Below are positions 9,695-57,650 of a stretch of DNA of 64,000 nucleotides, piece after piece. The notes below the pieces were generated by a model. That model saw nothing but the letters and a program-made list of their open reading frames with translations, had not been told where the DNA came from and made no database searches. Origin of the DNA: Octopus sinensis (Eukaryota); the NCBI RefSeq assembly GCF_006345805.1, contig NC_042999.1:9858001-9922000 (forward strand), written 5' to 3'. Position 1 is the stretch's first letter; every line of letters starts with the position of its first letter. The position numbers and the translations under genes are program-made.

Positions 9695-10871
9695 CAGCGA
9701 CCCCTCGTTTATCGCGGTAGATTGGTTCCGAGACCGGCCGCGATAACTGAATTTCCTCGGCGAAGTAGGGACACCATATTTACAGTATTTATCTAACGTG
9801 TATTAGGACTTTTAAAACCCTCCCTGTACTGTTAACAACTCACCCATTACAGTAGTCTATTAATAACTAGGACAACTGTTAAGCAATAACACTTTAGATT
9901 TAAAAAGAAAATAAAGATTGTTACTGAATTCAATACGAAAGAAGTTGAAGTAAAATTTGAATGATGATGGTGATGAATTTGCTGCGCAGTAGAAATGATG
10001 ATGATGAAGCTGACGGCGGTGCCCTTTCCTAGGACACCTCTTCCACTTCTTCCAAAGATGCAACCGTAGTAGTTGCAGCAGGAACTGACTCTTTTTTGCG
10101 AGGCTGCAAGAACATTCTGATAGGAAGTTGCTGCCGCTGCTTCCTTTTCTGTTCAAAGAGCATCTTGTAGGGATTCATGACTTCGTTGACCTTGTTGCAA
10201 AATTGCACAGAACGAACCATATCGTCGCCCCATTCCTCTGAACCCTCTTTCAATTTTTTAGCCAGGCTGCAGAGCTTGGCCAGCCGTTCCAAAGTCAGAC
10301 CAGTTTGGTCGACAACTTTTTCCGTTTCTTGTTGCGTTTCTTCTTCTTTGCTGGCCGGCTTCGTCAAGTCTTCGAGGTCTGCGTCGGTTAGCGGCTGCGA
10401 GTAGCAGTCTAATAACGCGTTAGAAGAAGCAGCATGCTTCCAGCCTTGGAAGACGCAGCGCAGCGTAAAGTAGTACAGTAAACCACTCAGCGAGAAAGCT
10501 TGAAGCGAAATGGCCGCGAGACAGAGACAAGGGAAGATGCTGCGGATCTGAGCATCGGTCAAAGCACCAATCACAGGCCAGATTATAAAATAGAAAGCTG
10601 TGATTCGTCGTCTCTCTCCATTGCACCAATCACAGCCCGTCTTAAGTTCAAATATCTCTGTATATGCTTTTTTGCTATTTTACGCTTGTTTTGTTGTTCC
10701 TAGACTAGGAAATAATATTTATTATTAATATTTTAATGGATTTAATGAAAAATTTTAGGTGTTCATATATATATATATTTTTAAAATAAGCGAAGTCGTG
10801 AATCCGCGATAGTTGAACCGCGAAGACGGGAATCCGCGATAGTTGAACCGCGAAGTAGCAAGGGATCATTG
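9695..10871 (-). mobile_element. Internally deleted Tigger/pogo DNA transposon
   Basis: TIRs CAGCGACCCCTCG / CAATGATCCCTTG, TA TSD at 9693 and 10872; ORF 10029-10574 encodes a Tigger-type C-terminus (QPLTDADLEDL...YKMLFEQKRKQRQQLPIRMF). Confidence 0.8.
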
Positions 10872-11167
10872 TAATGCAATTGTTGATCTTCCTGCCAACA
10901 ATATATAACGTCCGGTACTAATGCTAATCGCCTAGAATCTAAAACGTGGTTTCTCATGACGTTCGTGCGTTCGAATGTTACACTTTCACCAATTTTATCA
11001 AAAGCATTTTCAAGGGGTACAGATTTAAGCATTGAAATAAGAAAATAGACAGTTTTCTATAAGTTTTTTTTTTTACTTTCTTATTGCGATGCATTTTTCG
11101 AAATATTCTCTCATTTCGTAGAATTTCCACGGTTCCTGATGGTGTTGTCGTTGTTATTTATGTTGTC

Positions 11168-16730: not shown

Positions 16731-17154
16731 ATCCAGGGTGGTGGATTGGCGGAATTATTAGAGCGTCGGACGAGATGTTTTATCGTAGCTAATCCGGATC
16801 TCTAAGTTCTAAGTTACCCGCCGGCTTCTGTCCCCGGAGGATTCCCAGGCAGTGTTTATATTTTTAACGCTATGGCCAGCGCTGGATTGAATAGTACCGC
16901 CCAGGTGTCGAAACCATAATGATATCCGTTTGGATACTGATGATGGGAATGAACAAACGTTATGGTGGATTGTGAATTTCATATATGTTAGTCTCGTTAT
17001 TCTTGGTTGTCTTTCATTTCTGTAAAGTGGAAAGTGTATGTAGATACACAGTTTGTAGGAATCCCTTTGGTATTGTTTGGTTTTCTTCACAGATAACCTA
17101 ATAAGGTTTGGACCAGGCTTAAACACTGGTGTCTAGTTTGGGGAGGTCCTAAGG

Positions 17155-27729: not shown

Positions 27730-28341
27730 CCCATCCTTCTCTAATTCCCTTTTTTTGCCTTTCACTATTTTCTATCTGTCTGCCTGTCTGTCTCTCTCTT
27801 TCTGTTCTCTCTCTCGTTGCTCACACCTGACCATCGTCCAACTTTTTTTCCTCATGTGACCATCTTTCTTTTCCTGCACGGACGTTCTAAGGACTGGACG
27901 TCCCCTATCTCTCTCTTCTATCTTTTCTCTATTCAAAGAAAATATTTCTCCAGCGTTCACTATTTTCCCCTCGTTCTGGTCTAACGACCCTCCATATTTG
28001 TTTTCGTTCGGTTTCCTTGTATGTCTCCACTGTCATGTTTTTCTTCCCAACTTTGACCCTCCATAAATCCCAAATTTTATTGTGGTACTCATGGGAGCAA
28101 CTGTCTTCGAATACTCATATTGTTCTTGATTGCCCGAAATGGGAAGCAGATAGACAGCCGACAACTGATGAAGAGTTGTTCTTTGTATTCTTTGCATTAC
28201 TTGTTCTGTTTTCCATTTTTCCTCTCGTTTGCGTATTTAACTTATTTGTTTTCACATTTCATGTTCTTTACTGTTGGTGACGTCCTGTACCCAATAAATG
28301 CATATATATTATTATTTATTATATTATTATTATATATTATT

Positions 28342-28429
<88 letters not shown>

Positions 28430-29263
28430 TATATACACACACATACAACATTCATACATACATCATATATATATATATATTTCCGCTCCACCGGTCACTC
28501 CTTGCAACACCATCTGTGTTCGGTTTGTCTTACACAGAGGCCATCCGGATCCGTTGCGCAGCCGTGAACAGGAATTAATCTTCTCTCTTCGCTCTATACG
28601 CCATTTGGTCTCAACTCTCCCCCCTCCTCATCTAACCCCCTCTCCCCCCTCCTCACCTATCCTTTCTCCCCCCGACCCCTACTTCTTCAGTCCTTCATCC
28701 TTTCACCCCCTACTCCCTTCCCTTCTTCCCTCTTTCTCCTCCCTCTTCCCCTTCCCTCTGCTCCTCCACTCCCTCTCTCCCCTTCTCTCTCTCCCCCCCC
28801 CCCTCCCTCTTTCTACTTCATCCCCCTCCTCACCTTCTTCTACCCCATAGTCTCCTCTTCCCCCTTCTTCCTCCCCCTCTTCTTCCCCTCCCCTTCTCTC
28901 CCCCTCTTCTTCCCCCTCCCCCTCTCTCCCTCACTACACCCAAAGGACTTTACATAATCACATCAACATTATGATGTGCCATACTAATACACACACCAAT
29001 AATAATACTAAATACGTACTAATACACAACTAGTACATACTAATACATACACCAACCCTATACATACACACATCCAGACCCCTCCCACGCACTTTTAGCT
29101 GGCCCTCAACCCTTTTATCAACCCTATTATCTCCCTTATTTCGCTCTCGCGTCTCATGTTTGATCTTTGACCTCTGGCCGAAATCAGATCGCCATGTTGA
29201 TTCGTTAGCTACTGCACGCATTTTTTTTCTCTCCTTCTTTCTGTGTTTTTCTCTCTCTGTGTA

Positions 29264-29301
29264 TCTTTCTGTTGAAGAGCGTAGGCTCGAAACGTTAAAG
29301 A
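29264..29301 (+). ncRNA. Minimal hammerhead motif in the upstream pLTR
   Basis: TCTTT-CTGTTGA-A-GAGC GTAG GCTC-GAAAC GTT-AAAGA; palindromic ACGT stem III; A6U core deviation. Confidence 0.65.
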
Positions 29302-30009
29302 CTTGTTTTATTTATATTTCCTGAGCGCCATACTAATACAATTGTTCGTTTGTTTCCACCTGCCTTCGTCTTTTGTTTATTTTCATAAAGCTTCCCGTTA
29401 TATATTATGCGCTCACGTGGTCTCACTTTCATCCTATATTCTACCAATACCACTATCAACACTTACCTCTACCTTGGATTTCTTTACCTCTTGGATACTT
29501 ACCATGGCTGCACCTCTCTTTCGCGGATCAAAGTGACTTTGCATTGATGTGAAATCCTTAAAAAATATACCACGACGTCTACACATTTCTCACCTTGAAC
29601 TTTCAACCTTGAACTTGTTCGCATAAACTGTCCCGTTTGTTGTATTTTTATTTCTCTTATATTACCACTTTTTTTACATTCATTTCATGCTTCCCACATT
29701 TTCCTGAATTTTTGTTCTCCTTTCCGTCTTTCTTCCCTCTCTGGATGTCCATACTCCGTTTCCTCTGCCTGCACCCCCTTTTTTTGCCTCCCCCTCTCTC
29801 TGCTCCCTTCTTTCTTTCCCTTTTCGTTTGCCCCGTCTTTTCTGCCCCTATCGCTTACTTATCTAGTTTTTTCATACGATTATTATTTTTTGTTTTTTTG
29901 AACGTTTGTTTTTCCCTTTTTGCGATCCTTTTTTCTATTTTTTCATACGATAATTTTTTGTTTTTTGTTTTTTTTGTTTTTTCGAACGTTTTTTTTCCGC
30001 TATCCCATC

Positions 30010-32900
30010 ATGCCGGATCCTAGGTCCTACCTCCTCACCCTCCATCACCGTTTGAAGGATCATCTACGTTCGCTTCCTGTATATTGCCTTCAGCCGTCCG
30101 TTAATCTCTCTCTACTTCTTTTTAAAAAAACCCGCTTCTCTAGCCATGTCTCTTTCCTAAGCCGCTGCCTACATCACCGACTCATCCCTAAAGGTTTCCG
30201 CCTCCACTTCCACCCTGCTCTCCACTCGGATTCTTCCATCTTACCCATACTCCGCACCACATCTTACCGCCTTATGCGGGCCACCATTCGCTCCAATCTC
30301 TCCAAACTACATGCCATCAACCGCCTTCTTCCTCCTGCTTTCTCCACCTTCTTCTCCTCTCTGCCGCCTCTCTATGCTCCAAACACGCTACGCTTCATTA
30401 TCCATTTGAATCAACTCTTCCATCAATTTCTTTCTGATACCAAACTCGTAAACTCCAATCACTCTTCCATTCCACCCTACCCGACGCCACTACCCCACAA
30501 CTCCCACCACCCTTCTCCCCCCGATAGGCTCCATCCACCCACACCTAACCCCACTGCCCCTCCCTACAACCCCTTCTCCCCTCCCGTTAGGCTCCATCCA
30601 CCTACACCTAACCCTACTGCCCCGCCCAACCACCCCCACACCTCCCCAATCCCTCCCCCTCAGACCTCCACGAGACCTACCACCCCTCCTACTTCTATTC
30701 CACCCACCCCTTCTCCACTTCCGTCTGTTGTTACCATTCCCCCGATCTTCCCCTCTCTGCGGCTGAACGCTCCGTCCTTGGTAGGGGTCTGCGTTTCATC
30801 CCCCTCACTCCATCCTGTAAGGAATTCCAGACGCGAGTTGATGTCCACAGCTTTGTGCGCCGTGTCCGGTTGGGTGCGCATTACCACGACTCGCCACCCA
30901 CACCCCACGAAGAGGACGACTGCTTCACTGGCCTGGGCCGCCGACCATCCCCGTGGACGCCTGCCCCTGGCCAGATCCTAGCAGTGGATCTTTTCGCGGG
31001 CGCTTGTCAGCGTGCATTGGAGCGGTTCAACTTCTCCAGGCGCCAACGCCGCCTCAACATCTCCCCGGCTGAGCTCTTGGCTCTTCGTTCCCTCCAACGG
31101 CGCGCTGACATTATCATCAAACCGGCTGACAAGGGTGGAGCTGTAGTGGTGTGGCGCGCGGACCTCTATAGGGCCGAGGCTTTCCGCCAACTCAATGACA
31201 CCTCCTTCTATTCCCCTCTGCCCTCTAACCCCACACGTAGCTACCAACAGACGGTATCCTCTACTGTCCAAGACCTCATCTCGTCCTCCCGTCTCCCCCG
31301 CACCGCATCCAACCTAATTGTGCGAACCCCACGTACCCCCACCATTTACTTCCTCCCCAAAATCCACAAACCCAACAACCCTGGCCGCCCCATCGTCTCC
31401 GCCTGTAACTGCCCCACGGAGCTCATCTCTAAATACCTCGACCGTGTCCTTGCCCCCCTAGTGGCATCTCTTCCCTCCCACATCCACGATACCAACCATG
31501 CTCTCCGGCTTTTCAACTCTTTCTCCTTTCCTCCCGGCTCCTCCAAAATCCTTTTTACTATGGACATCCAAAGCCTCTATACTGTTATCCCTCACCACGA
31601 AGGACTGCAGGCCCTTCGACACTTTCTTGACCTCCGCTCTAACCCTGTACCTGACACCTCCACACTCATTCGTCTGGCCGAACTTGTCCTTACTCTGAAC
31701 TGCTTCTCGTTCGCGGGCGAGTTCTACCATCAGGTCTCGGGAGTGGCCATGGGAACGCGAATGGGCCCCAACTATGCGAACCTGTTCGTTGGCTATGTTG
31801 AGGCCCAAATATTCTCTAATTTCACTGGTCCCACTCCTGAACTATATGGTCGTTATATTGACGACATTATCGGTGCCACCTCACTCTCCCGCGAACATCT
31901 AGATTCCTTCCTCTCTTCGTCCAATCTTTCCATCCAGCCCTCCACTTCACTTCCACTATCTCCAACACCTCTGTCTCCTTCCTCGACATTTCGGTTAGCA
32001 TTCTTCACTCCACTCTTACCACCTCCATTCACTACAAACACACAGACTCACACTCATACCTCAACTTCTCTTCCTCCCACCCAACACACCAAGCTTTCCA
32101 TCCCCTATTCCCAATTCCTCCGTCTACGTAGGCTCTGTAGTGACGACCATGACTTTGAGACTCAGTCTCAACGTATGGCTCACCACTTCACCCTACGTGG
32201 ATACCCCCTCACCACTATCCACACCGCCCTTGCCAGAGCACGGTCCGTGGACCGTGTATCTGCTCTCTCTCCCCGAACCCGCCCTGTAGTCTCCCGCCTC
32301 CCTTTTCCCCTCACTTACCACCCCACGACCCTACGTCTCCAACGCACCATTCTTCGAGCTTTCCGTCATCTCCAGTCCGACCCGTCCACTTCACACCTCT
32401 TCCCTAACCGACCCCTCCCCTCTTTCAAACGAGCCCACAACCTTCGAGACCTTTTGGTCCATAGCTCCTTCCCTGACCCTACCTCCCAACCCGGCTCGTT
32501 CCCCTGCTCCCGCCCACGTTGCCGCACTTGCCCTTACCTCTCCAACACCACCGCCCTCACTAGCACCCACCATCGACCCTATCCCATCATCCACTCCTTC
32601 ACCTGCACCTCCAGCAATATTATCTATTGCATCTCTTGCTCTCTCTGCAATCCTTGTACATCGGACAAACGGGACGCCGCTTGGCTGACCGGTTCGCGGA
32701 ACACCTTCGTGACATCCACCTTGCGAACGACACACCGGTCTCACGCCATTTCCGCTCCACCGGTCACTCCTTGCAACACCTATCTGTGTTCGGTTTGTCC
32801 TTACACAGAGGCCATCCGGATTCCCGTTTGCGCCGTGAACAGGAATTAATCTTCTCTCTTCGCTCTTATACGCCATTTGGTCTCAACTCTCCCCCTCCTC
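30010..32900 (+). pseudogene. PLE polyprotein, RT plus GIY-YIG endonuclease, split by frameshifts
   Basis: IKPADKG, LPKIHK, FTMDIQSLYT, GVAMGTRMGPNYANLF, RYIDDI; CSRPRCRTC linker; NIIYCISC...LYIGQTGRRLADRFAEH; frameshifts may be assembly indels. Confidence 0.92.
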
Positions 32901-33744
32901 ATCTACCCCCCTCTCCCCCCCTCTCACCTATCCTTTCTCCCCCCCGACCCCTACTCTTCAGTCCTTCATCCTTTCACCCCTACTCCCCTTCCCTTCTTCC
33001 CTCTTTCTCCCTCCCTCTTCCCTTTCCCTCTGCTCCCTCACTCCCTCTCTCCCCTTCTCTCTTCCCCTCTCCCTCTTTCCTCTTCATCCTCCTCACCTTC
33101 CTCTCCCCCATCCTCTCCTCTTCCCCCTTCTCCTCCCCCTCTTCTTCCCCCCCCTCTCTCCCCCCTCTTCTCCCCCCCCCCCCCTTCTCCTCACTACACC
33201 ACATGACTTTACACATCACATCACATATGATGTGCCATACTAATACACACACCAACTAATACATACTAATACGTACTAATACATACTAGTACATACTAAT
33301 ACTTACACCAACCCTATACATACACACGTCCAGACCCCGCATACGCACTTATACTCTCTCTCACACACACACACACACCTATACATACCAATACGTACTA
33401 ATACATACTAATACATACTAATACATACACCAACCCCATACATACGCACGTCCAGACCAATCTTACGCACTAATACTCTCTCATACACACACACACACAC
33501 ACAACACACCCTTATACATACTAATACATACACCAACCCTATACATACACACATCCAGACCCCTCCCACGCACTTTTAGCTGGTCCCTCAACCCTTTATC
33601 AACCCTATTATCTCCCCTTATTTCGCTCTCGCGTCTCATGTTTGATCTTTGACCTCTGGCCGAAATCAGATCGCCATGTTGATTCGTTAGCTACTGCACG
33701 CATTTTTTTCTCTCCTTCTTTCTGTGTTTTTCTCTCTCTGTGTA

Positions 33745-33782
33745 TCTTTCTGTTGAAGAGCGTAGGCTCGAAACGTTAAAGA
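33745..33782 (+). ncRNA. Minimal hammerhead motif in the downstream pLTR
   Basis: Identical to 29264-29301. Confidence 0.65.
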
Positions 33783-34596
33783 CTTGTTTTATTTATTTTC
33801 CTGAGCGCCATACTAATACAATTGTTCGTTTGTTTTCCACCTGCCTTCGTCTTTTGTTTATTTTCATAAAGCTTCCGTTATATATATATATATTATATTA
33901 TATAATATATATATATTATATTATTATATATATATAATATATAATGTGTGGTGTGTGTGGGTGTTTTTGTTTTTGTGTGTGCGCCGTATATATAGATAAT
34001 ATATATATGATGGGGTCTTTTCAATTTCCGTCAACAATCTACTTACAAGGCTTTGTCGGTCGAGACTAAAGGAGAAGACCACTGCCAAGTACAACGCCAG
34101 TTGCCTATGAATGATATATCTATAGTTTATATATACAGTGTATTAAGTTTTGGTGCTGATGATGCCCGAAGCACCAAGAAGGATTTTGTTTAGAACTCCC
34201 GCTCGCTGGAAGAAACCCCAACCGAGAGAAGCGAATGAGGGGGGGAAAACAAAGGAAATATGGTGAGTGCCGGGGCTATGCCAAAGCAATAAGTAGCAAG
34301 CAAGGTTTAATCCCCATACCGAGATGAGAGCAGAAAGCTGCAGGTCTGACCTCTGCAGTCTTCACAACACGATGAACATATCAGGGGGCAAATATGGCTT
34401 TAGATCAGGAGACTTAAACCCTGTCAAGAGACAGTGCTACGATAACTAACTCGATAAACTCCAGCTGGGACGCCTGCGTGAGAGTGTCCGGGTTGAAAAA
34501 CACAAAACAGCTAATGACCCCAAGGAACATCAATGATGATGTGCGCCCAGGAGCAGCACAGGATGATGTCTGGAAAAATATATTTATTTATATGAT

Positions 34597-35445: not shown

Positions 35446-35545
35446 NNNNNNNNNNNNNNNNNNNNNNNNNNNNNNNNNNNNNNNNNNNNNNNNNNNNNNN
35501 NNNNNNNNNNNNNNNNNNNNNNNNNNNNNNNNNNNNNNNNNNNNN
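35446..35545. other. Assembly gap (100 N)
   Basis: Run of N. Confidence 1.
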
Positions 35546-50279: not shown

Positions 50280-50545
50280 TGTTGACAATGGTGATGATTG
50301 GGGTGGCTGTGGATGATTGCGTTGATGATGACGATGGTGGAGATGTTGTTGGTGGTGGTGACGATGACCCTGATGGGGGTGTCAGTAGTGGTGGTGGTGG
50401 TGGTGGTGGTGAGAGTAGCGGTGAAGGTGGAGTCGATGGCGACTATAATGCAAACAATAGGGGGCGGCTGTGATGTTCATGCAGACGCTATTGCTCTTGA
50501 CGATGATGATGATCACGACGATGACGACGACGACGATGGTGGTGG

Positions 50546-50580
<35 letters not shown>

Positions 50581-50650
50581 ATGGTGGTGGGGTGGTGGTG
50601 GTGGTGGCGGCGGCGGCGGCGGCGGTGGTGGTGGTGGTGTTGGCGGCGGC
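50280..50650. repeat. (GAT/GGT/GGC)n compound repeat
   Basis: Direct inspection. Confidence 0.9.
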
Positions 50651-51164
50651 GCTGCTTCTGCCTGTAAATAGCTTTGTAATGAAGCATGCATAATCGTCAT
50701 ACGAAACCAAAAGGGATTTATCATTTCTTGTGCCAAACGACAGACAAACCCCGGCGCTCCTCCCATAGCGCAACAACCGGTAAACAAACAACATGTGTGC
50801 CTGTGTGCGTGTGCGTGTGCGTGTGCGTTTGTGTGTCTGTATTTGTATGTGTGTTTGTCTGTTCATGTGTGTCTGTAAATTTAAATTTATGTGTTCGTGA
50901 ATGAAGTCACACATAGAAAACATACGTGAGTGGTGTGTGTGTGTGTGTGTGCGTTTATGTCTGTGTGTCTGTCTTTCTGTCCGTCTGAATGTATGCTCGC
51001 ATGAGTGTATATATTCGTGTAAATATATATGCCCGTATGCATGTATGTATATGTATTATATATATATGTATGTGTGTAAGATCTAGGGATCTAAGTGAAG
51101 GAAGAAAGACAGCGTCAAGCAATCTGTACTCTTATGTGGTATATATAATAATATAATAAATATT

Positions 51165-51196
<32 letters not shown>

Positions 51197-51241
51197 GTAT
51201 GTATTATATACGTATATATCAATTATATATATATATAATAT

Positions 51242-51272
<31 letters not shown>

Positions 51273-52008
51273 ATAAATATAAAAATATTAAAATACTAAG
51301 TCTCTCTAAAAGAGAACAACGGCAGCGTTCCCGGAAAATATTAGTTATCGCCATACTAATATGGCATTCTTATAAAAATAAGAATAAGCTGACCGCTTAT
51401 TAGCTCCATGAGGCCATCGCCTTAAGTTAGATTTGATACCAAACTGTATCCATATAACCTTTGAACAGGAGGTCAGTCGCTCCACACTACTTGGCCGGCA
51501 GCTATACAGACCTCCCTTGTTCAAAGGTTATATGGATACAGTTTGTGTATCAAATAGCTAACTTAAGGCGATGGCCTCATGGAGCTAATAAGCGGTCAGC
51601 TTTATTCTTATTTTTATAAGAATGCCATATTAGTATGGCGATAACTAATATTTTCCGGGAACGCTGCCGTTGTTCTCTTTTAGAGAGACTTAGTAATTTT
51701 AATATTTCTATTATTGAAAACAAGTGGATGTATTCCACCGAAGCTAGGTAAATAAAACCTTTGAACAGAGATTGTCGGAAGCGACACCTACTGATTTTTC
51801 CTTGGATTACGTCGGATTATTTTACGCTGTAAGCTGTTATGTTAGTTCGTTTGTTTCTGGATTTAACGTACAATTTTTGGAGTATTAACTTGTGGAACAA
51901 AGTAATTTTCGCCCTTCGGGGTAGAAAATTTCTTTTTATATATGAACTTTAATTCAGTGTGGATTAATTTTTATCTTGTCTCTTGTGACAAGTCACTTGC
52001 ATTTTAAT

Positions 52009-53501
52009 ATGGATCTTGACTTAACGTCAAATTCTGATTTTCCCGAGATGGGAGAAGTTAAAAAATAAAGGAAATCAAAGGATACAAAGGAGAAACAAAG
52101 TTTTTCGGAAGCCGTTGGAGGCAATGTTATAGAACTGGAAGTAACAATGGAGGATCTCTTCAAGTTCAGAAAGTTCATACAAAGGAATGGAGAAGAAACG
52201 AGAATAATACCGCCCCCTGACACCTTACAAGCAATCCGTGAGAAGACGGTAATTTATAAGGTATATAATATTAAGGAAAAAAAGATTGCAGATGTAAGAA
52301 ATGAATTGGTAGAACGGTGCATGGCACCAATTTGGAACAAGGTTCGCTATGTTGGCCGAGGAGTGAGAAGCGCTACTATTGAAGCGCATTTCGAGTCGGC
52401 TAGCATAGCGAAGGAAATTTCAACTCAAACGTTGAAGAGTGCAGACATCCTGTTGCTGCCCACGTACTTAGGGCGCAGAACAGCTAAGATAACAATAGAG
52501 GATATACCAACAGGTTACGATGTAATGTGGGCAGCAACAGCGGTCGTATTCGACGTAGAAGAGAAATTAAACATTTTAAACATGAGGATGAAAGAGGCAA
52601 AATTTTGGAAAGGTCAGCAGCTTGAAATGATCGTTCAAGCTGACAATGCAACGCTGGAGAGTTTGCCAGACAGGGTCTTCGTGGGGATGGACACACATGC
52701 GCGGGTATCGGTGGAGGGACGTAGGCCTAGATGTTTCAAATGTGGGCAGAAGGGTCACGTCCGCTCAGAGTGCAAAAAAAGAAAAAACCGTTAATGCCCC
52801 CATTCAAACCGCTGTGGAGAACAAAGCAGACATCACAGCAACAACAAAAGAGAATACCCGGAAAAAGCAAAATGAAAGTCAAAAGGAGGAAAAGAAAATG
52901 AATGGAAAACAAAGCGAAAACGAAAACGAGGTGGAAAATATTTTATCAAATGGAAAAGAACTGGAAGTAATGGAATATACGACTGTAACCAACAAAAGGA
53001 AGAAATCCAATACCCCGGACTCCCCCCCCCAAACAAAAAGAAAAACAAACGCAGAAGAACAACACAAAAAAATTATCCAATCCCACCCCGCTGGCACTAC
53101 TTTTGTAGGCCAGCATTTCATTAAACCCCAGCCCCCAACTTTAAAAGGATTCAAAAAAACCGATAGGTGCATTGCTTATAACACAAAAAACGAGAGAGTA
53201 GTTTGGTACATAAAGGCGAAACCAAACATAAAATGTTTCAAATCATCGGAAAAAAAAACCGGATTGGAGGTATGCGAAGGTTGGAGAGGAGGAATGGAAG
53301 GAGAGATTCTTCCAACTACACGTGAGGGACAACCTGATTAAAGATGTCACACAAGAGGTGATAGCTGGAAAATTGAATATTAGCCCGGCAGCCACTCCAT
53401 CCCAGAGCCCGGTGGCAACGCCGGTTAAATGCCCAGCAACAACGGAGAGTGTGGGGGAGGCAGGCAGACAAAAGCTGCCATGCTCCCTCTCACAACCGTA
53501 A
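52009..53501 (+). pseudogene. LINE ORF1 (CCHC zinc knuckle), frameshifted
   Basis: CFKCGQKGHVRSEC; the ORFs 52147-52794 and 52646-53341 join via a homopolymer frameshift; end point approximate. Confidence 0.8.
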
Positions 53502-53527
53502 GTAACAACTTTCTTCTTCATTCATCG

Positions 53528-56500
53528 ATGATTAAGTTGGGCTGTATAAATGTGCGTGGAATGGGGTCGAAATGGAAACAGGCTTGCTTGCTGGACGACC
53601 TCAGGACACACAGAATAGATGTAGCCATTGTCACCGAGTCCAAGATGAGAGGAACCCAAGCGTTCTCGCATCTTCTCAATGGTTACGAGAAATTTATTTC
53701 TCCTAGCCGAGGAGGGAGTGCAGGCGTGGCAGTCCTTATCAGGAAGAACTTGGACTTACAGGTAAGTACTGTCTTTATGGACCCAGAAGGTAGGCTGGTT
53801 GTCCTCGATGTAACTCACGTGAGTAAGCAGTCCTTCAGGTTGGTAGCTGTTTATGCTCCTAATGAGGGTAGGCAGACTGGTTTTTATCGGAACTTGGAGC
53901 ACTTTCTAGTGACGTCTAAAACGGTAGTATTGGTAGGGAGGGGATTTCAACACTATCATCGATGCGCGGATAGATAGTGTGGGCTCGTCTGATAGAAGGG
54001 GGAATCCTTGCCTTAAGGGTCTACTGACGAGCTTTAATCTAGTAGATCGGTTTCGAATGGATGAGCCGAGCATTCCACAGTGGACGTGGAGTAAAATGAC
54101 GGCTCACGCTCGCGCAGATCGTATATAGATAGGGTATTTGTTAAAGAACGAGATAGGAATAGCATTAGCTGTCCACAATTTTGTATTGTGCCTTACACGG
54201 ATCACAAATTAGTGACGTGTGAGGTACATGTAGATAAATGCCATAGACAGGGACCCGGATACTGGAAAATGAACAAGTCTATTTTGGCTTGTGAAGCTTT
54301 CCGTAACCGGATTATGGAATTAGTCCAGAGGGCATTATGTGGAACCATCATTAATAATAGATGGTGGATCGCCCTCAAAAGAGCCATCCGTTTGGAGTCC
54401 ATTAGATTTAGCAACCAGCTAAGTTTAGATAGGACTAGAATAGAGGGCGATTTAGTTAAGAACTTAGACGAGGCAATGGGATCTGGCTGTGCATCTAGAG
54501 TGTTAGCAGAGAGAACGATCTTGTACCGTCACCTCAATGCCAAGCATGAAGGATGTAGAGTCAGAGCTAAGCTACGTGCAGTGAAACGAGAAGGTATTAA
54601 TGTTGCCGGATGGGCACGTCGTGTGGAGAGTCAGAAGGGCAAAAAGTCCTCTATTAAGTCTTTAACTGACGAACAGGGACGCAAAATCTATGGACAGGAG
54701 GAGATACAGAAGGTCTTTCAACAGCATTTCGCTCGGTTGTTTGGGGAGGGCGATCCACTCGAGCGAGGGGAGGACTTACAGAACTTCCTAGCTGGTGGGC
54801 CTCGGCTCTCGCCAAGCAGAGCGGAACGCTGTGAAGGACCGATTACTCCCGCGGAGGTAAGAGGGGTTTTGGCTGAATGCGCCCGGGAAAAGTCGCCGGG
54901 ACTGGATGGTCTGCCCTATGAGTTTTATTGTTGTATGCCGGACTTGTTCGGGGACATACTGGCAAGCGTCTACGCAAACTGGCAACAGAATGGGAGGATT
55001 CCCAGTTCTGTGAGCCGGGAGTTGTGACGCTGATCCAGAAAGACCCGAGCAAGGGGGATAATATTAGTAATTATAGGCCCATAACTCTACTTAATGTAGA
55101 GTTAAAGATTTTGGCCAAGGTTTAGCAGAAAGGTTGAAGGTCGTCATGGAAAAACTTGTCGGAAGGCACAGACATGTGCAATCCCAGGCAGGTCGATCGA
55201 AGATAATCTTCACCTTCTACGCTACACTATAGACAGGGTTGGGCAATTAGCCGGCAAAGGAGGGGCATTGGTCCATTTAGACCAAAGTAAAGCATTTGAT
55301 AGGGTAGATCATCAGTACCTGGCGACGGTTCTCGAAGCGGCTGGGCTAGGTCCTGACTTTCGCGGGTGGATATCAGCTATGTACAGCGGTATCAAGTCCA
55401 CAGTCCAGATAAACGGTTACTTAACGGAACCGTTTTCGATTAAGCGTTCAGTTCGTCAAGGATGTCCCTTGTCCCCTCTCCTGTACGTTTTGGCTCTTGA
55501 GCCATTGCTGCGGAAGTTGGAGACGGTGAGATGCAATCCTAATGAAATCGGATGCGGTAAGTCTGTTTCTGCGTATGCGGATGACGTCACCTTCATCGTG
55601 TCCAACGAAGCACAACTAACTCGTGTAGAAGGTGCTCTCCGAAGATACGAAGCGGTGGCTGGGGCAAAAGTTAACAAGGACAAGTCCACTGGTTTGCGCC
55701 TCGGCACCTGGAGGAACAAGCCGATATCGTCCAGTGTTGTTGGACACTGGACAGATGGTCCTGTTAAATTGCTTGGAGTTTGGTTTGGTTCAGACTCCCA
55801 GACGGAGAAAAATTGGAGCGAGGTAGTGACCAAGGTAGAAGCCATAGTTCGGGAGTGGTCCGGAAGGCATCTTTCCTTGAAAGGGAGGGCGGAGGTGGTA
55901 CAGGTGTTTATAGCATCTGTAATCACCTATCGCCTGACTGTCGTGCCTTGCCCCGATTTGTGGCTAAGCAAGTTGGATCGACTCCTTTTCCGCTTTTTGT
56001 GGAAGGGAGGAAAGCCACTTGTAAGGCGCTCCGTGTGTTGCCAGGAACCACTAAAGGGTGGGCTGGGGATGCCTTGGTTAATGATGCGCAGGCATGCGCT
56101 GAGACTGAGACATCTCTGGTTTCACACTGGAAGGTGATAAGGTGTGGAGTCCGCTGGCAGATAATTTCTTCCCGCCCAACCGACTCTATGGAGAGATTTA
56201 AACCCGGTTTCATTAAAAGACGGAACCTGACTTTATGGCAGAAAGAGTGCCGACAGGCACTCTGGCTGATCCACAAGATAGGCAAAGCCGGCTGCGGAAT
56301 ACCACCTCGACATTTTATAGAAGGATGGTAGAGGCAAAAAATGACGACGTCCTAAGAGGGGCTCTGGGGTTCGATGAGGATCAACTATCCGACCTGTTTA
56401 AGAAGACTTTCAAGCCGGGGTATTTGGACAATTACCAAAAATCCCTGACTTGGCAGTGCTATAGGAATGCTCTACCTGTTCGCGATAAGTTATATAGGCA

Positions 56501-56933
56501 TGGAATGTCAGTGCCACCGACATGTCCAAGATGTGGGTTGGACGATGAAACCGTCCAGCACGCTTTTGTACATTGTCAGGAGCTGTCAGGCTTAATAAGT
56601 TACGTAGAACACGTGTTGTCGCATCTGGGACGAGTACAGCTATCGGCTGGTTCTATAATAAAGATGATACCGCCAGCTGGACTCTCAAAGGAAGGTGAGG
56701 CTTGTTTTCACTGTACGGTGGCAGTACTGAAAGAGTGTGTGTGGAGAACTAGATTGGAAGGTTTGGTGTCAGGAACCTTTGTCTCTGGATATGGTATGTT
56801 AAAATACTTCAGATACCATCTAAAGAGCAAGATGGATTTAGAGAAGAGGAACCTGACACAGAAAAAGTATGTGAATCGATGGAAGGATGTGATAAAAAAG
56901 GTGGGTGTGAGTAACCCTGCTTGGTCATCATGA
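53528..56933 (+). pseudogene. LINE ORF2: APE endonuclease, RT, C-terminal zinc finger, several frameshifts
   Basis: CINVRG, VTESK, YTDHKLV, KSPGLDGLP, LDQSKAFDRV, RQGCPLSPLLY, YADD, CPRCGLDDETVQHAFVHC. Confidence 0.93.
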
Positions 56934-57196
56934 AGGGAGAAAATAGTCTCTGGGCTCTTAGGCTGTCGGGTAAGAATCCTGACTGTGATATACCTAGCTG
57001 GACAAAATCATTTTAATTTTTTAAAAAAAAAGGAGAAAGTAAAGTCTAGTATCATAATCAATAATCAACATATGTAAATATCAAACGAACAACGTAAACT
57101 TTTTGTAATTATGTTTTGTATTGTAATGTACTATCTCTGTAAGATTTTTATAATCATAATAAAGATTTAGGAAGCGACACCTACTGGTTTGGCTAC

Positions 57197-57238
57197 GCTG
57201 CATTGAAAAGGGGCAATACCCCGAAACGCGTCTGTAGC
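57197..57238 (+). ncRNA. Minimal type I hammerhead ribozyme, U3:A8 variant
   Basis: GCTGCA-TTGAAAA-GGGG CAATA CCCC-GAAAC GC GTC-TGTAGC; ACGCGT palindrome; predicted cut after 57232. Confidence 0.8.
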
Positions 57239-57427
57239 TGCCGGCCAAGTAGTGTGGAGCGACTGACCTCCCTTGTTCAAAGGTTATATGGATACAGTTT
57301 GTGTATCAAATAGCTAACTTAAGGCGATGGCCTCATGGAGTAATAAGCGGTCAGCTTTATTCTTATTTTTATAAGAATGCCATATTAGTATGGCGATAAC
57401 TAATATATATATATATATTATATTAAG

Positions 57428-57493
<66 letters not shown>

Positions 57494-57650
57494 TAGGATA
57501 TTAATTAATTATCTATTTACTAAAAGGACAATTATAACAATATACATACATGTATAACATGTTATGCTTTACATATATAATAAATAAAATATATAAAGAT
57601 ACCAGTAATTATTAAAATATATAACATGCAGGAATAGAAATTGGGATAAT

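What the first reader, a model, noticed from the sequence alone, without database searches (positions are those of the whole stretch)
51777..57186. Tx1-clade LINE inserted immediately upstream of a hammerhead ribozyme: possible retrozyme-targeting retrotransposon
A 5.4-kb, near-intact APE-type LINE with a 17-bp TSD and no poly(A) tail sits in the HHR monomer 10 bp before stem I. Tx1-clade elements are known to be target-specific (Tx1L in a transposon, Keno in U2 snRNA, Dewa in tRNA arrays, Koshi/Kibi in microsatellites). If this family targets HHR repeats, read-through RNA would be cut 46 nt beyond the TSD, and in arrays also upstream. The host ribozyme could then supply defined transcript ends. 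I know of no described LINE targeting a ribozyme repeat. A single insertion cannot prove specificity.
Basis: partly seen in the sequence, partly recalled or inferred. Interest (0 to 1): 0.9.

Follow-up and report, generated by a model that had tools for sequence, protein, structure and literature searches.

The report
Dead LINE nested in hammerhead retroelement
A full-length but broken L1/Tx1-type LINE has inserted, with a clean 17-bp target duplication, into a small hammerhead-ribozyme-carrying retroelement; this looks like an ordinary transposon-in-transposon event, and nothing shows that the LINE aims at the ribozyme or uses it.

Summary
An exact 17-bp duplication (51777-51793 and 57170-57186) brackets a 5376-bp LINE with a CCHC ORF1, an ORF2 with APE, RT and zf-RVT domains, and no A-tail. 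Just downstream is a type-I hammerhead-like motif (57197-57238, cut after C57232).

Four corrections:
- ORF2 is not near-intact: it has six frameshifts and two in-frame stops.
- Rfam does not recognise the hammerhead. It is a U3:A8 core variant with a one-pair helix III and a palindromic loop, a type reported to cleave as dimers. Only one complete copy lies at this locus.
- The insertion is inside the distal helix I, not upstream of it.
- The "monomer" is not an array. It is a Penelope-style unit: an inverted 5'-truncated copy plus 1.4 tandem units, sitting in (TA)n.

The targeting idea stays untested, because no second copy of this LINE or of the 363-nt element could be found anywhere. Indirect evidence leans against it. 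Relatives at 44% identity sit in at least four unrelated contexts with no hammerhead. The whole lineage ends a few bases after its own AATAAA without an A-tail, so the missing tail says nothing about read-through. Clade-level Tx1 placement was not tested.

The parts
51140..51295 (.). (TA)n-rich microsatellite bounding the hammerhead-element block on the left
   Evidence: Read directly. A matching (TA)n tract lies on the right side.
51279..51511 (-). Inverted, 5'-truncated partial copy of the 363-nt element (unit positions about 332-363 followed by 1-206). Its 5' end falls within about 3 nt of the predicted hammerhead cut.
   Evidence: blastn of the rebuilt unit against the window: 95.6% over 206 bp and 94% over 34 bp. 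The junction was read.
51506..51776 (+). Direct copy of the 363-nt element, unit positions 1-271, up to the insertion site
   Evidence: 98.6-100% identical to 57262-57406 over the shared 146 bp.
51777..51793 (+). Target-site duplication, left copy (GGAAGCGACACCTACTG)
   Evidence: 17/17 identical to 57170-57186.
51794..52146 (+). LINE 5' UTR
   Evidence: The sequence between the duplication and the first ATG of ORF1.
52147..52794 (+). LINE ORF1, 215 aa, open, with a C-terminal CCHC zinc knuckle
   Evidence: Pfam zf-CCHC, E=1.8e-5. Homologous to the N-terminal part of the relatives' ORF1.
53429..56933 (+). LINE ORF2. APE endonuclease at about 53429-54150, reverse transcriptase at about 54990-56134, zf-RVT at 56436-56582. 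Broken by six frameshifts (near 53940, 54100, 55015, 55120, 55157 and 56117) and two in-frame TAA codons (56199, 56214).
   Evidence: Pfam PF03372, PF00078 and PF13966. Frame analysis. PDB match to human L1 ORF2p, E=1.7e-62.
56934..57169 (+). LINE 3' UTR. AATAAA at 57158-57163, element ends GATTTA, no A-tail.
   Evidence: Relatives also end a few nt after AATAAA.
57170..57186 (+). Target-site duplication, right copy
57178..57256 (+). Type-I hammerhead-like motif with extended helix I. Proximal helix I is 57197-57202 paired with 57233-57238. Core is UUGAAAA at 57203-57209. Helix II is GGGG-CAAUA-CCCC at 57210-57222. GAAA is at 57223-57226. Helix III is A:U capped by CGCG. The predicted cut is after C57232.
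   Evidence: Descriptor scan: one hit in the window and none in 300 shuffles. RNA fold. Architecture matches metazoan type-I hammerheads, and the U3-A8 variant is described in PMC4209133. Rfam finds nothing.
57262..57406 (+). Second, partial head-to-tail unit of the 363-nt element (unit positions 1-146)
57404..57495 (.). (TA)n microsatellite bounding the block on the right

Best explanation
This is a nested transposon insertion, in two steps.

Step 1 (inferred). A 363-nt hammerhead-bearing non-autonomous retroelement, of the animal 'retrozyme' or Penelope-derived kind, integrated into a (TA)n microsatellite. It did so in the arrangement typical of Penelope-like elements: an inverted 5'-truncated copy next to 1.4 head-to-tail units.

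Step 2. A full-length L1-superfamily, Tx1-like LINE then integrated into that element by target-primed reverse transcription.
- The bottom strand was nicked at 5'-GCTTCC/GACA-3'.
- The top strand was nicked 17 bp downstream.
- This produced the 17-bp duplication.

The LINE copy is now dead, or was copied from a dead template. The hammerhead just downstream survived because the duplication restored its distal helix I. The anatomy of step 2 is shown. The nick positions follow from standard target-primed reverse transcription geometry.

Nothing found here indicates that the LINE family seeks out this element or depends on its ribozyme. The LINE has its own AAUAAA signal 6 nt from its 3' end.
For: LINE and duplication:
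- Exact 17-bp duplication at the precise ends of a complete LINE.
- ORF2 is colinear with human L1 ORF2p, and the endonuclease matches the L1 endonuclease.
- Six frameshifts and two stops in ORF2.

The flanking element:
- The flanks join into one 363-nt unit. As a circle it folds to -114.8 kcal/mol, against -83.2 +/- 5.0 for shuffles (z = -6.3).
- It carries a single significant hammerhead-type motif, with the 6-bp helix I, 4-bp helix II and short palindromic helix III described for metazoan type-I hammerheads. The U3-A8 covariation is documented in PMC4209133.
- The block has an inverted 5'-truncated copy, a partial tandem, about 30 extra nt on the inverted copy, and (TA)n on both sides. These are the features listed for Penelope-like insertions in PMC8557442.
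- A real Penelope-like element in the same window is also bounded by (TA)n on both sides.
- The inverted copy starts within about 3 nt of the predicted cut. The rough chance of that is 7/363, about 2%.

Against a dependence on the ribozyme:
- Six copies of the 44%-identical relatives lie in at least four unrelated 3' contexts, all end just after AATAAA without an A-tail, and none has a hammerhead nearby.
Against: - Only one copy of this LINE family was available, so a target preference cannot be excluded.
- The inferred nick site is not the A/T-rich L1 consensus, although A/T-rich DNA is abundant nearby.
- Many Tx1-clade families are target-specific, including for other transposons and satellites (PMC4494074).
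- The LINE and the ribozyme are in the same orientation, and the ribozyme was left intact.
- Some relatives show recurrent contexts. L008 and L010 are followed by the same ~460-bp tandem repeat. Two Argonauta hians LINEs are each followed by (TCTA)n plus the same 160 bp. L001 is a head-to-tail LINE array.
- All six frameshifts lie at short homopolymer runs, so some could be assembly errors and the copy may be less damaged than it looks.
Confidence: 0.65

Rival explanations
1. This LINE family is target-specific for the hammerhead element, as other Tx1-clade families are for particular transposons, snRNA genes or microsatellites. In the stronger form, read-through transcripts are cut by the host ribozyme 63 nt past the LINE end, and the target-derived tail anneals to the nicked target so that integration is precise.
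For: - The nick site is not A/T-rich, and the junction is precise and tail-less.
- The LINE and the intact hammerhead are in the same orientation, 46 nt past the duplication.
- The Tx1 clade has precedent for targeting transposons and satellites, and co-transcription with the target is known for R2 (PMC4494074).
- Some relatives show recurrent flanks.
Against: - Only one copy was seen.
- Relatives lack an A-tail in unrelated contexts, so the missing tail is a lineage trait.
- The element has its own AATAAA 6 nt from its end.
- The hammerhead has a one-pair helix III with a palindromic CGCG loop, a type reported to cleave efficiently only as a dimer (PMC7229834; PMC4209133). This locus holds only one complete hammerhead.
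- No hammerhead lies near any relative.
- An insertion anywhere in a 363-nt unit is at most 363 nt upstream of a cut site in a tandem array, so the proximity is weak evidence.
Confidence: 0.2
2. The hammerhead-like motif is not a working ribozyme but a decayed or chance motif, and the flanking repeat is simply an ordinary short repeat. The finding would then be a LINE inside a generic repeat.
For: - Rfam covariance models give no hit even at E<=10 on 121 nt.
- C3 and G8 are both non-canonical.
- No second copy of the core is available, so covariation cannot be tested.
- No copy of the element was found outside this locus.
Against: - The descriptor gives one hit against none in 300 shuffles, and an analytic estimate of about 7e-4 per window.
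- U3:A8 is the compensatory form of the C3:G8 pair and is known in about 1,300 Schistosoma motifs (PMC4209133).
- The helix lengths and the palindromic helix III match the metazoan consensus.
- The unit folds into a rod (z = -6.3).
- The inverted copy starts at the predicted cut.
Confidence: 0.15
3. The arrangement is an assembly or recombination artefact and not a true insertion.
For: - The window contains a 100-N gap elsewhere.
- Penelope-type inverted and tandem structures are known to trouble assemblies (PMC8557442).
- The frameshifts lie at homopolymer runs.
Against: An exact 17-bp duplication at the precise ends of a complete LINE, with flanks that rejoin into one continuous and strongly folding unit, is what target-primed reverse transcription produces. 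A misjoin would not be expected to create it.
Confidence: 0.03

Closest known systems
Tx1-clade target-specific LINEs: Tx1L in the Tx1D piggyBac element, Keno in U2 snRNA genes, Kibi and Koshi in (TC)n and (TTC)n, crocodilian Tx1 families in Mariner or Harbinger elements and satellites (PMC4494074)
   Same: An L1-superfamily element with APE, RT and a C-terminal zinc-binding domain and an ORF1 with a CCHC knuckle. It is inserted in another mobile element at a site that is not A/T-rich.
   Different: Specificity in those families was shown from many copies, and here there is one. Clade membership was not tested by phylogeny. A hammerhead-bearing retroelement is not among the targets mentioned in the passages of the papers read here.
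R2 and other rDNA-specific LINEs, which are co-transcribed with their target and processed by a self-cleaving ribozyme (my own knowledge, and as cited in PMC4494074)
   Different: R2 encodes its own HDV-like ribozyme at its 5' end and uses a restriction-like endonuclease. Here the ribozyme would belong to the target, would sit at the 3' side, and is of the dimer-dependent hammerhead type. No evidence of its use was found.
Animal non-LTR retrozymes and Penelope-derived hammerhead repeats (PMC7229834; PMC4209133; bioRxiv 10.64898/2026.07.22.740005)
   Same: A 363-nt head-to-tail unit, within the 150-450 bp range. A type-I hammerhead with a 6-bp helix I, a 4-bp helix II and a minimal palindromic helix III. 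A strongly self-paired RNA.
   Different: Only 1.4 tandem units and one complete ribozyme at this locus. The core is the U3:A8 variant. Copy number and RNA expression in the host are unknown. There is no sequence similarity to the Penelope-like element in the same window.
Penelope-like element insertion architecture (PMC8557442)
   Same: A partial tandem, an adjacent inverted 5'-truncated copy, about 30 extra nt at one end, and (TA)n microsatellite flanks.
   Different: The unit has no coding capacity. Mobilisation by a Penelope-like reverse transcriptase is inferred from architecture alone.
L1-Tx1 LINEs of Octopus vulgaris (PMC13282606)
   Same: Size: 421 recent insertions total 2.29 Mb, a mean of about 5.4 kb, and this element is 5376 bp. 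The closest relative named with an organism is from a cephalopod, Argonauta hians (48% identity).
   Different: The host of this window was not identified. No sequence from that study was compared.

Membership tests
L1-superfamily (APE-type) LINE | N-terminal apurinic-type endonuclease followed by a reverse transcriptase in one ORF2 | tested here: met
   PF03372 E=1.2e-5 and PF00078 E=1.3e-21. Colinear match of query residues 33-895 to human L1 ORF2p residues 6-889, E=1.7e-62. L1 endonuclease structures match at 1e-8 to 1e-11.
L1-superfamily (APE-type) LINE | Separate ORF1 upstream, and a target-site duplication of variable length | tested here: met
   ORF1 of 215 aa with a zf-CCHC. A 17-bp exact duplication.
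L1-superfamily (APE-type) LINE | 3' poly(A) tail | tested here: not met
   The element ends AATAAAGATTTA, followed directly by the duplication. Relatives likewise end a few nt after AATAAA. Tail-less L1-group lineages are known, so this does not exclude membership.
Tx1 clade | The RT domain groups with Tx1 references (Tx1L, Keno, Kibi, Koshi) and not with L1 proper | not tested
   No bona fide Tx1 or other clade reference sequences could be obtained with the tools. The only hints are one relative with a TX1-derived name at 31% identity and the L1-Tx1 class reported in octopus.
Tx1 clade | Type-I-like ORF1 (RRM and/or CCHC knuckle) instead of the mammalian Transposase_22 type | tested here: met
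   zf-CCHC found and no Transposase_22. An RRM was not detected by Pfam. The criterion is taken from PMC5203782.
Site-specific LINE | The same sequence in a large share of the flanks of independent copies (more than 20% in PMC4494074) | not testable with these tools
   One copy in the window. No other copy was found in the protein collection, by exact look-up, or in a viral-contig scan for the junction.
Type I hammerhead ribozyme | Conserved core CUGANGA ... GAAA ... UH | tested here: inconclusive
   The core reads UUGAAAA ... GAAA ... UC. C3 and G8 are replaced by U3 and A8, which keeps the C3:G8 pair as U:A. This variant is reported in Schistosoma Penelope-like elements (PMC4209133).
Type I hammerhead ribozyme | Three helices around the core, with helix I open-ended | tested here: met
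   Helix I has 6 bp plus a distal stem, helix II has 4 bp with a 5-nt loop, and helix III is A:U capped by CGCG. One hit in the window and none in 300 shuffles.
Type I hammerhead ribozyme | Match to the Rfam hammerhead covariance models | tested here: not met
   No hit at the gathering threshold, nor at E<=10 on 6.5 kb or on 121 nt.
Type I hammerhead ribozyme | Self-cleavage at the predicted site | not testable with these tools
   Indirect only: the inverted partial copy begins within about 3 nt of the predicted cut.
Animal non-LTR retrozyme / Penelope-derived non-autonomous element | Head-to-tail repeats of 150-450 bp, each carrying a type-I hammerhead | tested here: inconclusive
   A 363-nt unit with a head-to-tail junction. 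However, there are only 1.4 units and one complete hammerhead at this locus.
Animal non-LTR retrozyme / Penelope-derived non-autonomous element | Compact, highly paired monomer RNA, expressed as linear and circular RNA | tested here: inconclusive
   The fold has z = -6.3 against dinucleotide shuffles. Expression could not be tested.
Animal non-LTR retrozyme / Penelope-derived non-autonomous element | Penelope-type insertion architecture: partial tandem, adjacent inverted truncated copy, microsatellite bias | tested here: met
   compared with the description in PMC8557442. The Penelope-like element in the same window is also bounded by (TA)n.

The most novel reading that the evidence does not exclude
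A cephalopod-type L1/Tx1 LINE family homes specifically to a hammerhead-bearing, Penelope-derived retroelement and uses that element's ribozyme to trim its read-through transcripts. This would give a target-complementary 3' tail that guides precise, tail-less integration. It would be the first LINE that exploits a ribozyme belonging to its target.
Probability: 0.05. Interest if true: 0.8.

Novelty: new member of a known kind. Interest (0 to 1): 0.3.

Why it matters
As it stands, this is a well-resolved example of one retroelement nested in another, which is common in repeat-rich genomes.

Two side points have modest value.
- The 363-nt element adds a U3:A8 hammerhead in a probable mollusc to the animal retrozyme catalogue.
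- Its layout fits the recent proposal that animal retrozymes are moved by Penelope-like elements and not by LINEs. That layout comprises an inverted copy starting at the predicted ribozyme cut, a partial tandem and (TA)n flanks.

If the targeting idea were confirmed from genome-wide copies, it would add a new target class to site-specific LINEs. It would also add a new way of defining LINE transcript ends, which is of interest for programmable insertion tools.

Tried and rejected
Searches for another copy of the LINE family:
- Protein search with the C-terminal 232 aa gave only four hits, all at 57% identity or less.
- Search with 899 aa of frame-corrected ORF2 gave a best hit of 48%.
- Exact look-up of the C-terminal ORF found nothing on record.
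- A viral-contig scan for the junction pattern found nothing.

Searches for other copies of the 363-nt element:
- Exact look-ups of two short ORFs inside it found nothing.
- A six-frame translation of the unit used as a protein query gave no hit at E<=10.
- A viral-contig scan found nothing.

Hammerhead checks:
- Three Rfam searches of the window (whole window, 6.5 kb, 121 nt) gave no hammerhead.
- An Rfam search on the relative locus L001 gave only weak hairpin-type false positives.
- A relaxed descriptor found nothing in any relative locus.

Clade assignment:
- Cluster look-up of ten hits returned no clade-informative names.
- The Kojima 2015 paper has no supplement held as text.
- The better PDB score to the L1 endonuclease chimera carrying the Tx1 loop (47.8 bits, against 38.8 for the wild type) was rejected as evidence. 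That loop falls exactly on one of my stitched frameshift junctions.

Other points:
- The similarity between the LINE's last 140 bp and the 160 bp shared by the two Argonauta LINEs is not significant: 22 of 500 shuffles reach the score. No duplication was found that would settle whether that 160 bp belongs to the LINE.
- A 13-nt match between the Penelope-like element's repeat and the antisense strand of the 363-nt element, read directly, is at the level expected by chance (my estimate is about 0.7 expected) and was dropped.

Full report
**1. The observation**

The exact 17-mer GGAAGCGACACCTACTG occurs at 51777-51793 and at 57170-57186. The 5376 bp between the two copies is a complete LINE with these parts:
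- a 353-nt leader;
- ORF1 at 52147-52794, which is open, 215 aa long, and has a zf-CCHC (E=1.8e-5);
- a Lys/Glu-rich spacer;
- ORF2 at 53429-56933, with Exo_endo_phos, RVT_1 (E=1.3e-21) and zf-RVT (E=4.4e-11);
- a 236-nt 3' UTR that ends AATAAA(57158-57163)GATTTA with no A-run.

A frame-corrected ORF2 aligns end to end with human L1 ORF2p (query 33-895 against residues 6-889, E=1.7e-62). R2 proteins match far more weakly. The endonuclease matches L1 endonuclease structures. It is therefore an APE-type LINE of the L1 superfamily.

'Near-intact' is too generous. ORF2 changes frame six times, near 53940, 54100, 55015, 55120, 55157 and 56117. In the frame that aligns to relatives it also carries TAA codons at 56199 and 56214. 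All six frameshifts lie at short homopolymer runs, so some may be assembly errors. The two stops argue that at least part of the decay is real.

**2. The flanks**

Removing the LINE and one copy of the 17-mer joins 51506-51793 to 57187-57261. This gives a 363-nt unit that runs straight into a second, partial unit at 57262-57406 (98.6-100% identical over 146 bp).

Upstream, 51279-51511 is an inverted partial copy covering unit positions about 332-363 and then 1-206. The whole block is bounded by (TA)n on both sides. No other copy of the unit or of the LINE lies in the window.

**3. The hammerhead**

Rfam reports nothing, whether at gathering thresholds or at E<=10 on 6.5 kb or on 121 nt.

A generic type-I descriptor was then run. 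It asks for:
- a 6-bp helix I;
- the core YUGANRA, with positions 3 and 8 either C:G or U:A;
- a 4-bp helix II;
- GAAA;
- up to 30 nt for helix III;
- UH, followed by the return strand of helix I.

It gives exactly one hit in 64 kb, at 57197-57238(+). It gives none in 300 Markov shuffles, and the analytic expectation is about 7e-4. I allowed U3:A8 only after seeing the sequence, so some discount applies, but the margin is large.

The motif reads GCUGCA / UUGAAAA / GGGG-CAAUA-CCCC / GAAA / CGCG / UC, then the cut, then UGUAGC. A distal helix-I stem pairs 57178-57190 with 57241-57256.

Cervera and de la Pena describe the usual metazoan type-I hammerhead as having a 6-bp helix I, a 4-bp helix II and a helix III of 1-2 bp capped by a 2-4-nt palindromic loop. 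Such ribozymes work as dimers. The same paper reports about 1,300 U3-A8 covariant motifs in Schistosoma (PMC4209133). The axolotl and newt type, with one base pair capped by a palindromic tetraloop, cleaves poorly as a single motif and well as a dimer (PMC7229834). The motif here fits that class.

Two further points support a real ribozyme-bearing RNA element:
- The 363-nt unit folds as a circle to -114.8 kcal/mol, against -83.2 +/- 5.0 for dinucleotide shuffles (z = -6.3).
- The inverted partial copy begins within about 3 nt of the predicted cut. This is expected if cDNA synthesis ran off the 5' end of a ribozyme-cleaved RNA. The chance of it is roughly 7/363.

I put the motif at about 85% likely to be a genuine hammerhead, active now or formerly.

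**4. What the block is**

Craig et al. list the hallmarks of Penelope-like insertions: partial tandems, an adjacent inverted 5'-truncated copy, a 30-40-bp extension at one end, and a microsatellite bias that includes (TA)n for one clade. They contrast these with ordinary LINE integration (PMC8557442). The block at 51279-57406, with the LINE removed, shows all four.

The window also holds a real Penelope-like element:
- It encodes a reverse transcriptase and a CCHH/GIY-YIG endonuclease in ORFs at 29920-33259.
- Its pseudo-LTRs are at 28479-29405 and 32748-33885.
- It is bounded by (TA)n on both sides.

The 363-nt element is therefore best read as a non-autonomous, Penelope-mobilised retrozyme-type element. 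This agrees with the 2026 preprint that derives animal retrozymes from Penelope-like elements. It shares no sequence with the local Penelope-like element, and its hammerhead differs from that element's motif.

**5. The insertion**

By standard target-primed reverse transcription geometry, the bottom strand was nicked at 5'-GCTTCC/GACA-3' and the top strand 17 bp further on. The site lies inside the distal stem of helix I. The duplication regenerates that stem on the right-hand side, so the ribozyme downstream of the LINE is complete. The LINE and the ribozyme are on the same strand.

**6. The targeting hypothesis**

The decisive test is the flanks of other copies, and it could not be run. Neither the family nor the 363-nt element is represented in any collection I could reach.

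Indirect evidence from relatives at 44% identity (sample ERZ21867824) covers six copies. They comprise:
- a head-to-tail LINE array (L001/L002);
- one copy in unique sequence (L007);
- two copies followed by the same ~460-bp tandem repeat (L008, L010);
- two further copies with distinct flanks (L011a, L011b).

That makes at least four unrelated contexts, and no hammerhead lies near any of them. All six end a few nt after AATAAA with no A-tail. The tail-less end is therefore a trait of the lineage and not a mark of read-through priming.

In Argonauta hians, two LINEs that are 67-70% identical in ORF2 are each followed by (TCTA)n plus the same 160 bp at 98.9%, and then by unrelated sequence. I could not decide whether that 160 bp is a shared 3' module or a shared target.

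Further points weigh against the ribozyme-use model:
- The LINE has its own poly(A) signal 6 nt from its end.
- The hammerhead is of the dimer-dependent type, and only one complete copy exists at this locus.
- Any insertion into a 363-nt tandem unit lies close to a cut site.

Points that keep the idea alive:
- Many Tx1-clade families are target-specific, including for transposons and satellites (PMC4494074).
- The nick site is not A/T-rich.

My estimates are about 0.2 for some target preference toward this element, and about 0.05 for the full ribozyme-borrowing model.

**7. Classification**

L1-superfamily membership was tested and met. Tx1-clade membership was not tested, because no reference sequences could be obtained. 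Three things are consistent with it:
- the CCHC-type ORF1 (criterion from PMC5203782);
- one relative with a TX1-derived name;
- the octopus repeat annotation, where L1-Tx1 is the only L1-type class listed among recently active LINEs, with a mean insertion size of about 5.4 kb (PMC13282606).

The closest relative named with an organism is from Argonauta hians (48% identity). This suggests a cephalopod or other mollusc host, but the host was not established.

**8. Verdict**

The anatomy is confirmed and sharpened. The finding is a dead L1/Tx1-like LINE nested in a hammerhead-bearing, Penelope-style non-autonomous retroelement. That is a new member of known kinds. The targeting and ribozyme-borrowing idea is neither supported nor excluded, and it can be settled by a simple genome-wide flank survey.

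Noticed in passing
window 28479-33885 (+): A Penelope-like element. Its ORFs at 29920-33259 encode a reverse transcriptase and a CCHH/GIY-YIG endonuclease. Its pseudo-LTRs are at 28479-29405 and 32748-33885, and the downstream one carries a ~160-bp insertion. It is bounded by (TA)n on both sides (28300-28479 and 33886-33950).
   Followed up: partly
window 29276(+), 33757(+), 40104(-), 40260(+), 44433(+): Five copies of a Penelope-type minimal hammerhead-like motif: CUG(A/U)(A/U)GA-A-GAGC-GUAG-GCUC-GAAAC(G/A)U(U/A), then the cut, then AAAGAC. Only the 40104(-) copy has the canonical CUGAAGA core. 40104(-) and 40260(+) form a head-to-head pair about 140 bp apart. None of these reaches Rfam thresholds.
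   Followed up: partly
window 51279-51511 against 51506-51711: The inverted and direct copies of the 363-nt element form a near-perfect palindrome with ~200-bp arms and a ~30-nt spacer. The inner end of the inverted arm coincides with the predicted hammerhead cut, to within about 3 nt.
   Followed up: partly
L001/L002 (ena:ERZ21867824:ctg88761c): Full-length relatives of the LINE (44% aa identity) lie in a head-to-tail array with a period of ~6.82 kb and no recognisable spacer gene. Rfam finds no snRNA, tRNA, 5S or hammerhead there.
   Followed up: partly
L008 9158-10275 and L010 7173-8765: Two LINE copies on different contigs are followed by the same ~460-bp tandem repeat (93% identity, with different unit numbers) and then by a second, different LINE. 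This could be a recurrent target, a composite repeat or a segmental duplication.
   Followed up: no
L005 (Argonauta hians BAAFZT010000021.1) 10729-10965 and 16799-17074: Two LINEs that are 67-70% identical in ORF2 share an 86%-identical 3' end (...GGCTAATAAAGAAA), then (TCTA)n, then 160 bp at 98.9% identity, then unrelated sequence. It is unresolved whether the 160 bp is an exchanged 3' module or a common target.
   Followed up: partly
window 53940, 54100, 55015, 55120, 55157, 56117: All six ORF2 frameshifts lie at short homopolymer runs, and four of them form two compensating pairs. Some may be assembly indels and not real mutations.
   Followed up: partly
window 35446-35545: A run of 100 N, which is an assembly gap.
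   Followed up: no
window 50300-50660: Long imperfect trinucleotide repeats (GGT, GAT and GGC types) just upstream of the block, followed by dense (TA)n and (GTAT)n microsatellites. The region is very rich in simple repeats.
   Followed up: no
window 51374-51528: A weak Rfam 'L20 leader' hit (26 bits, E=0.06) falls on the palindrome centre of the inverted and direct copies. It is a false positive caused by the hairpin.
   Followed up: yes
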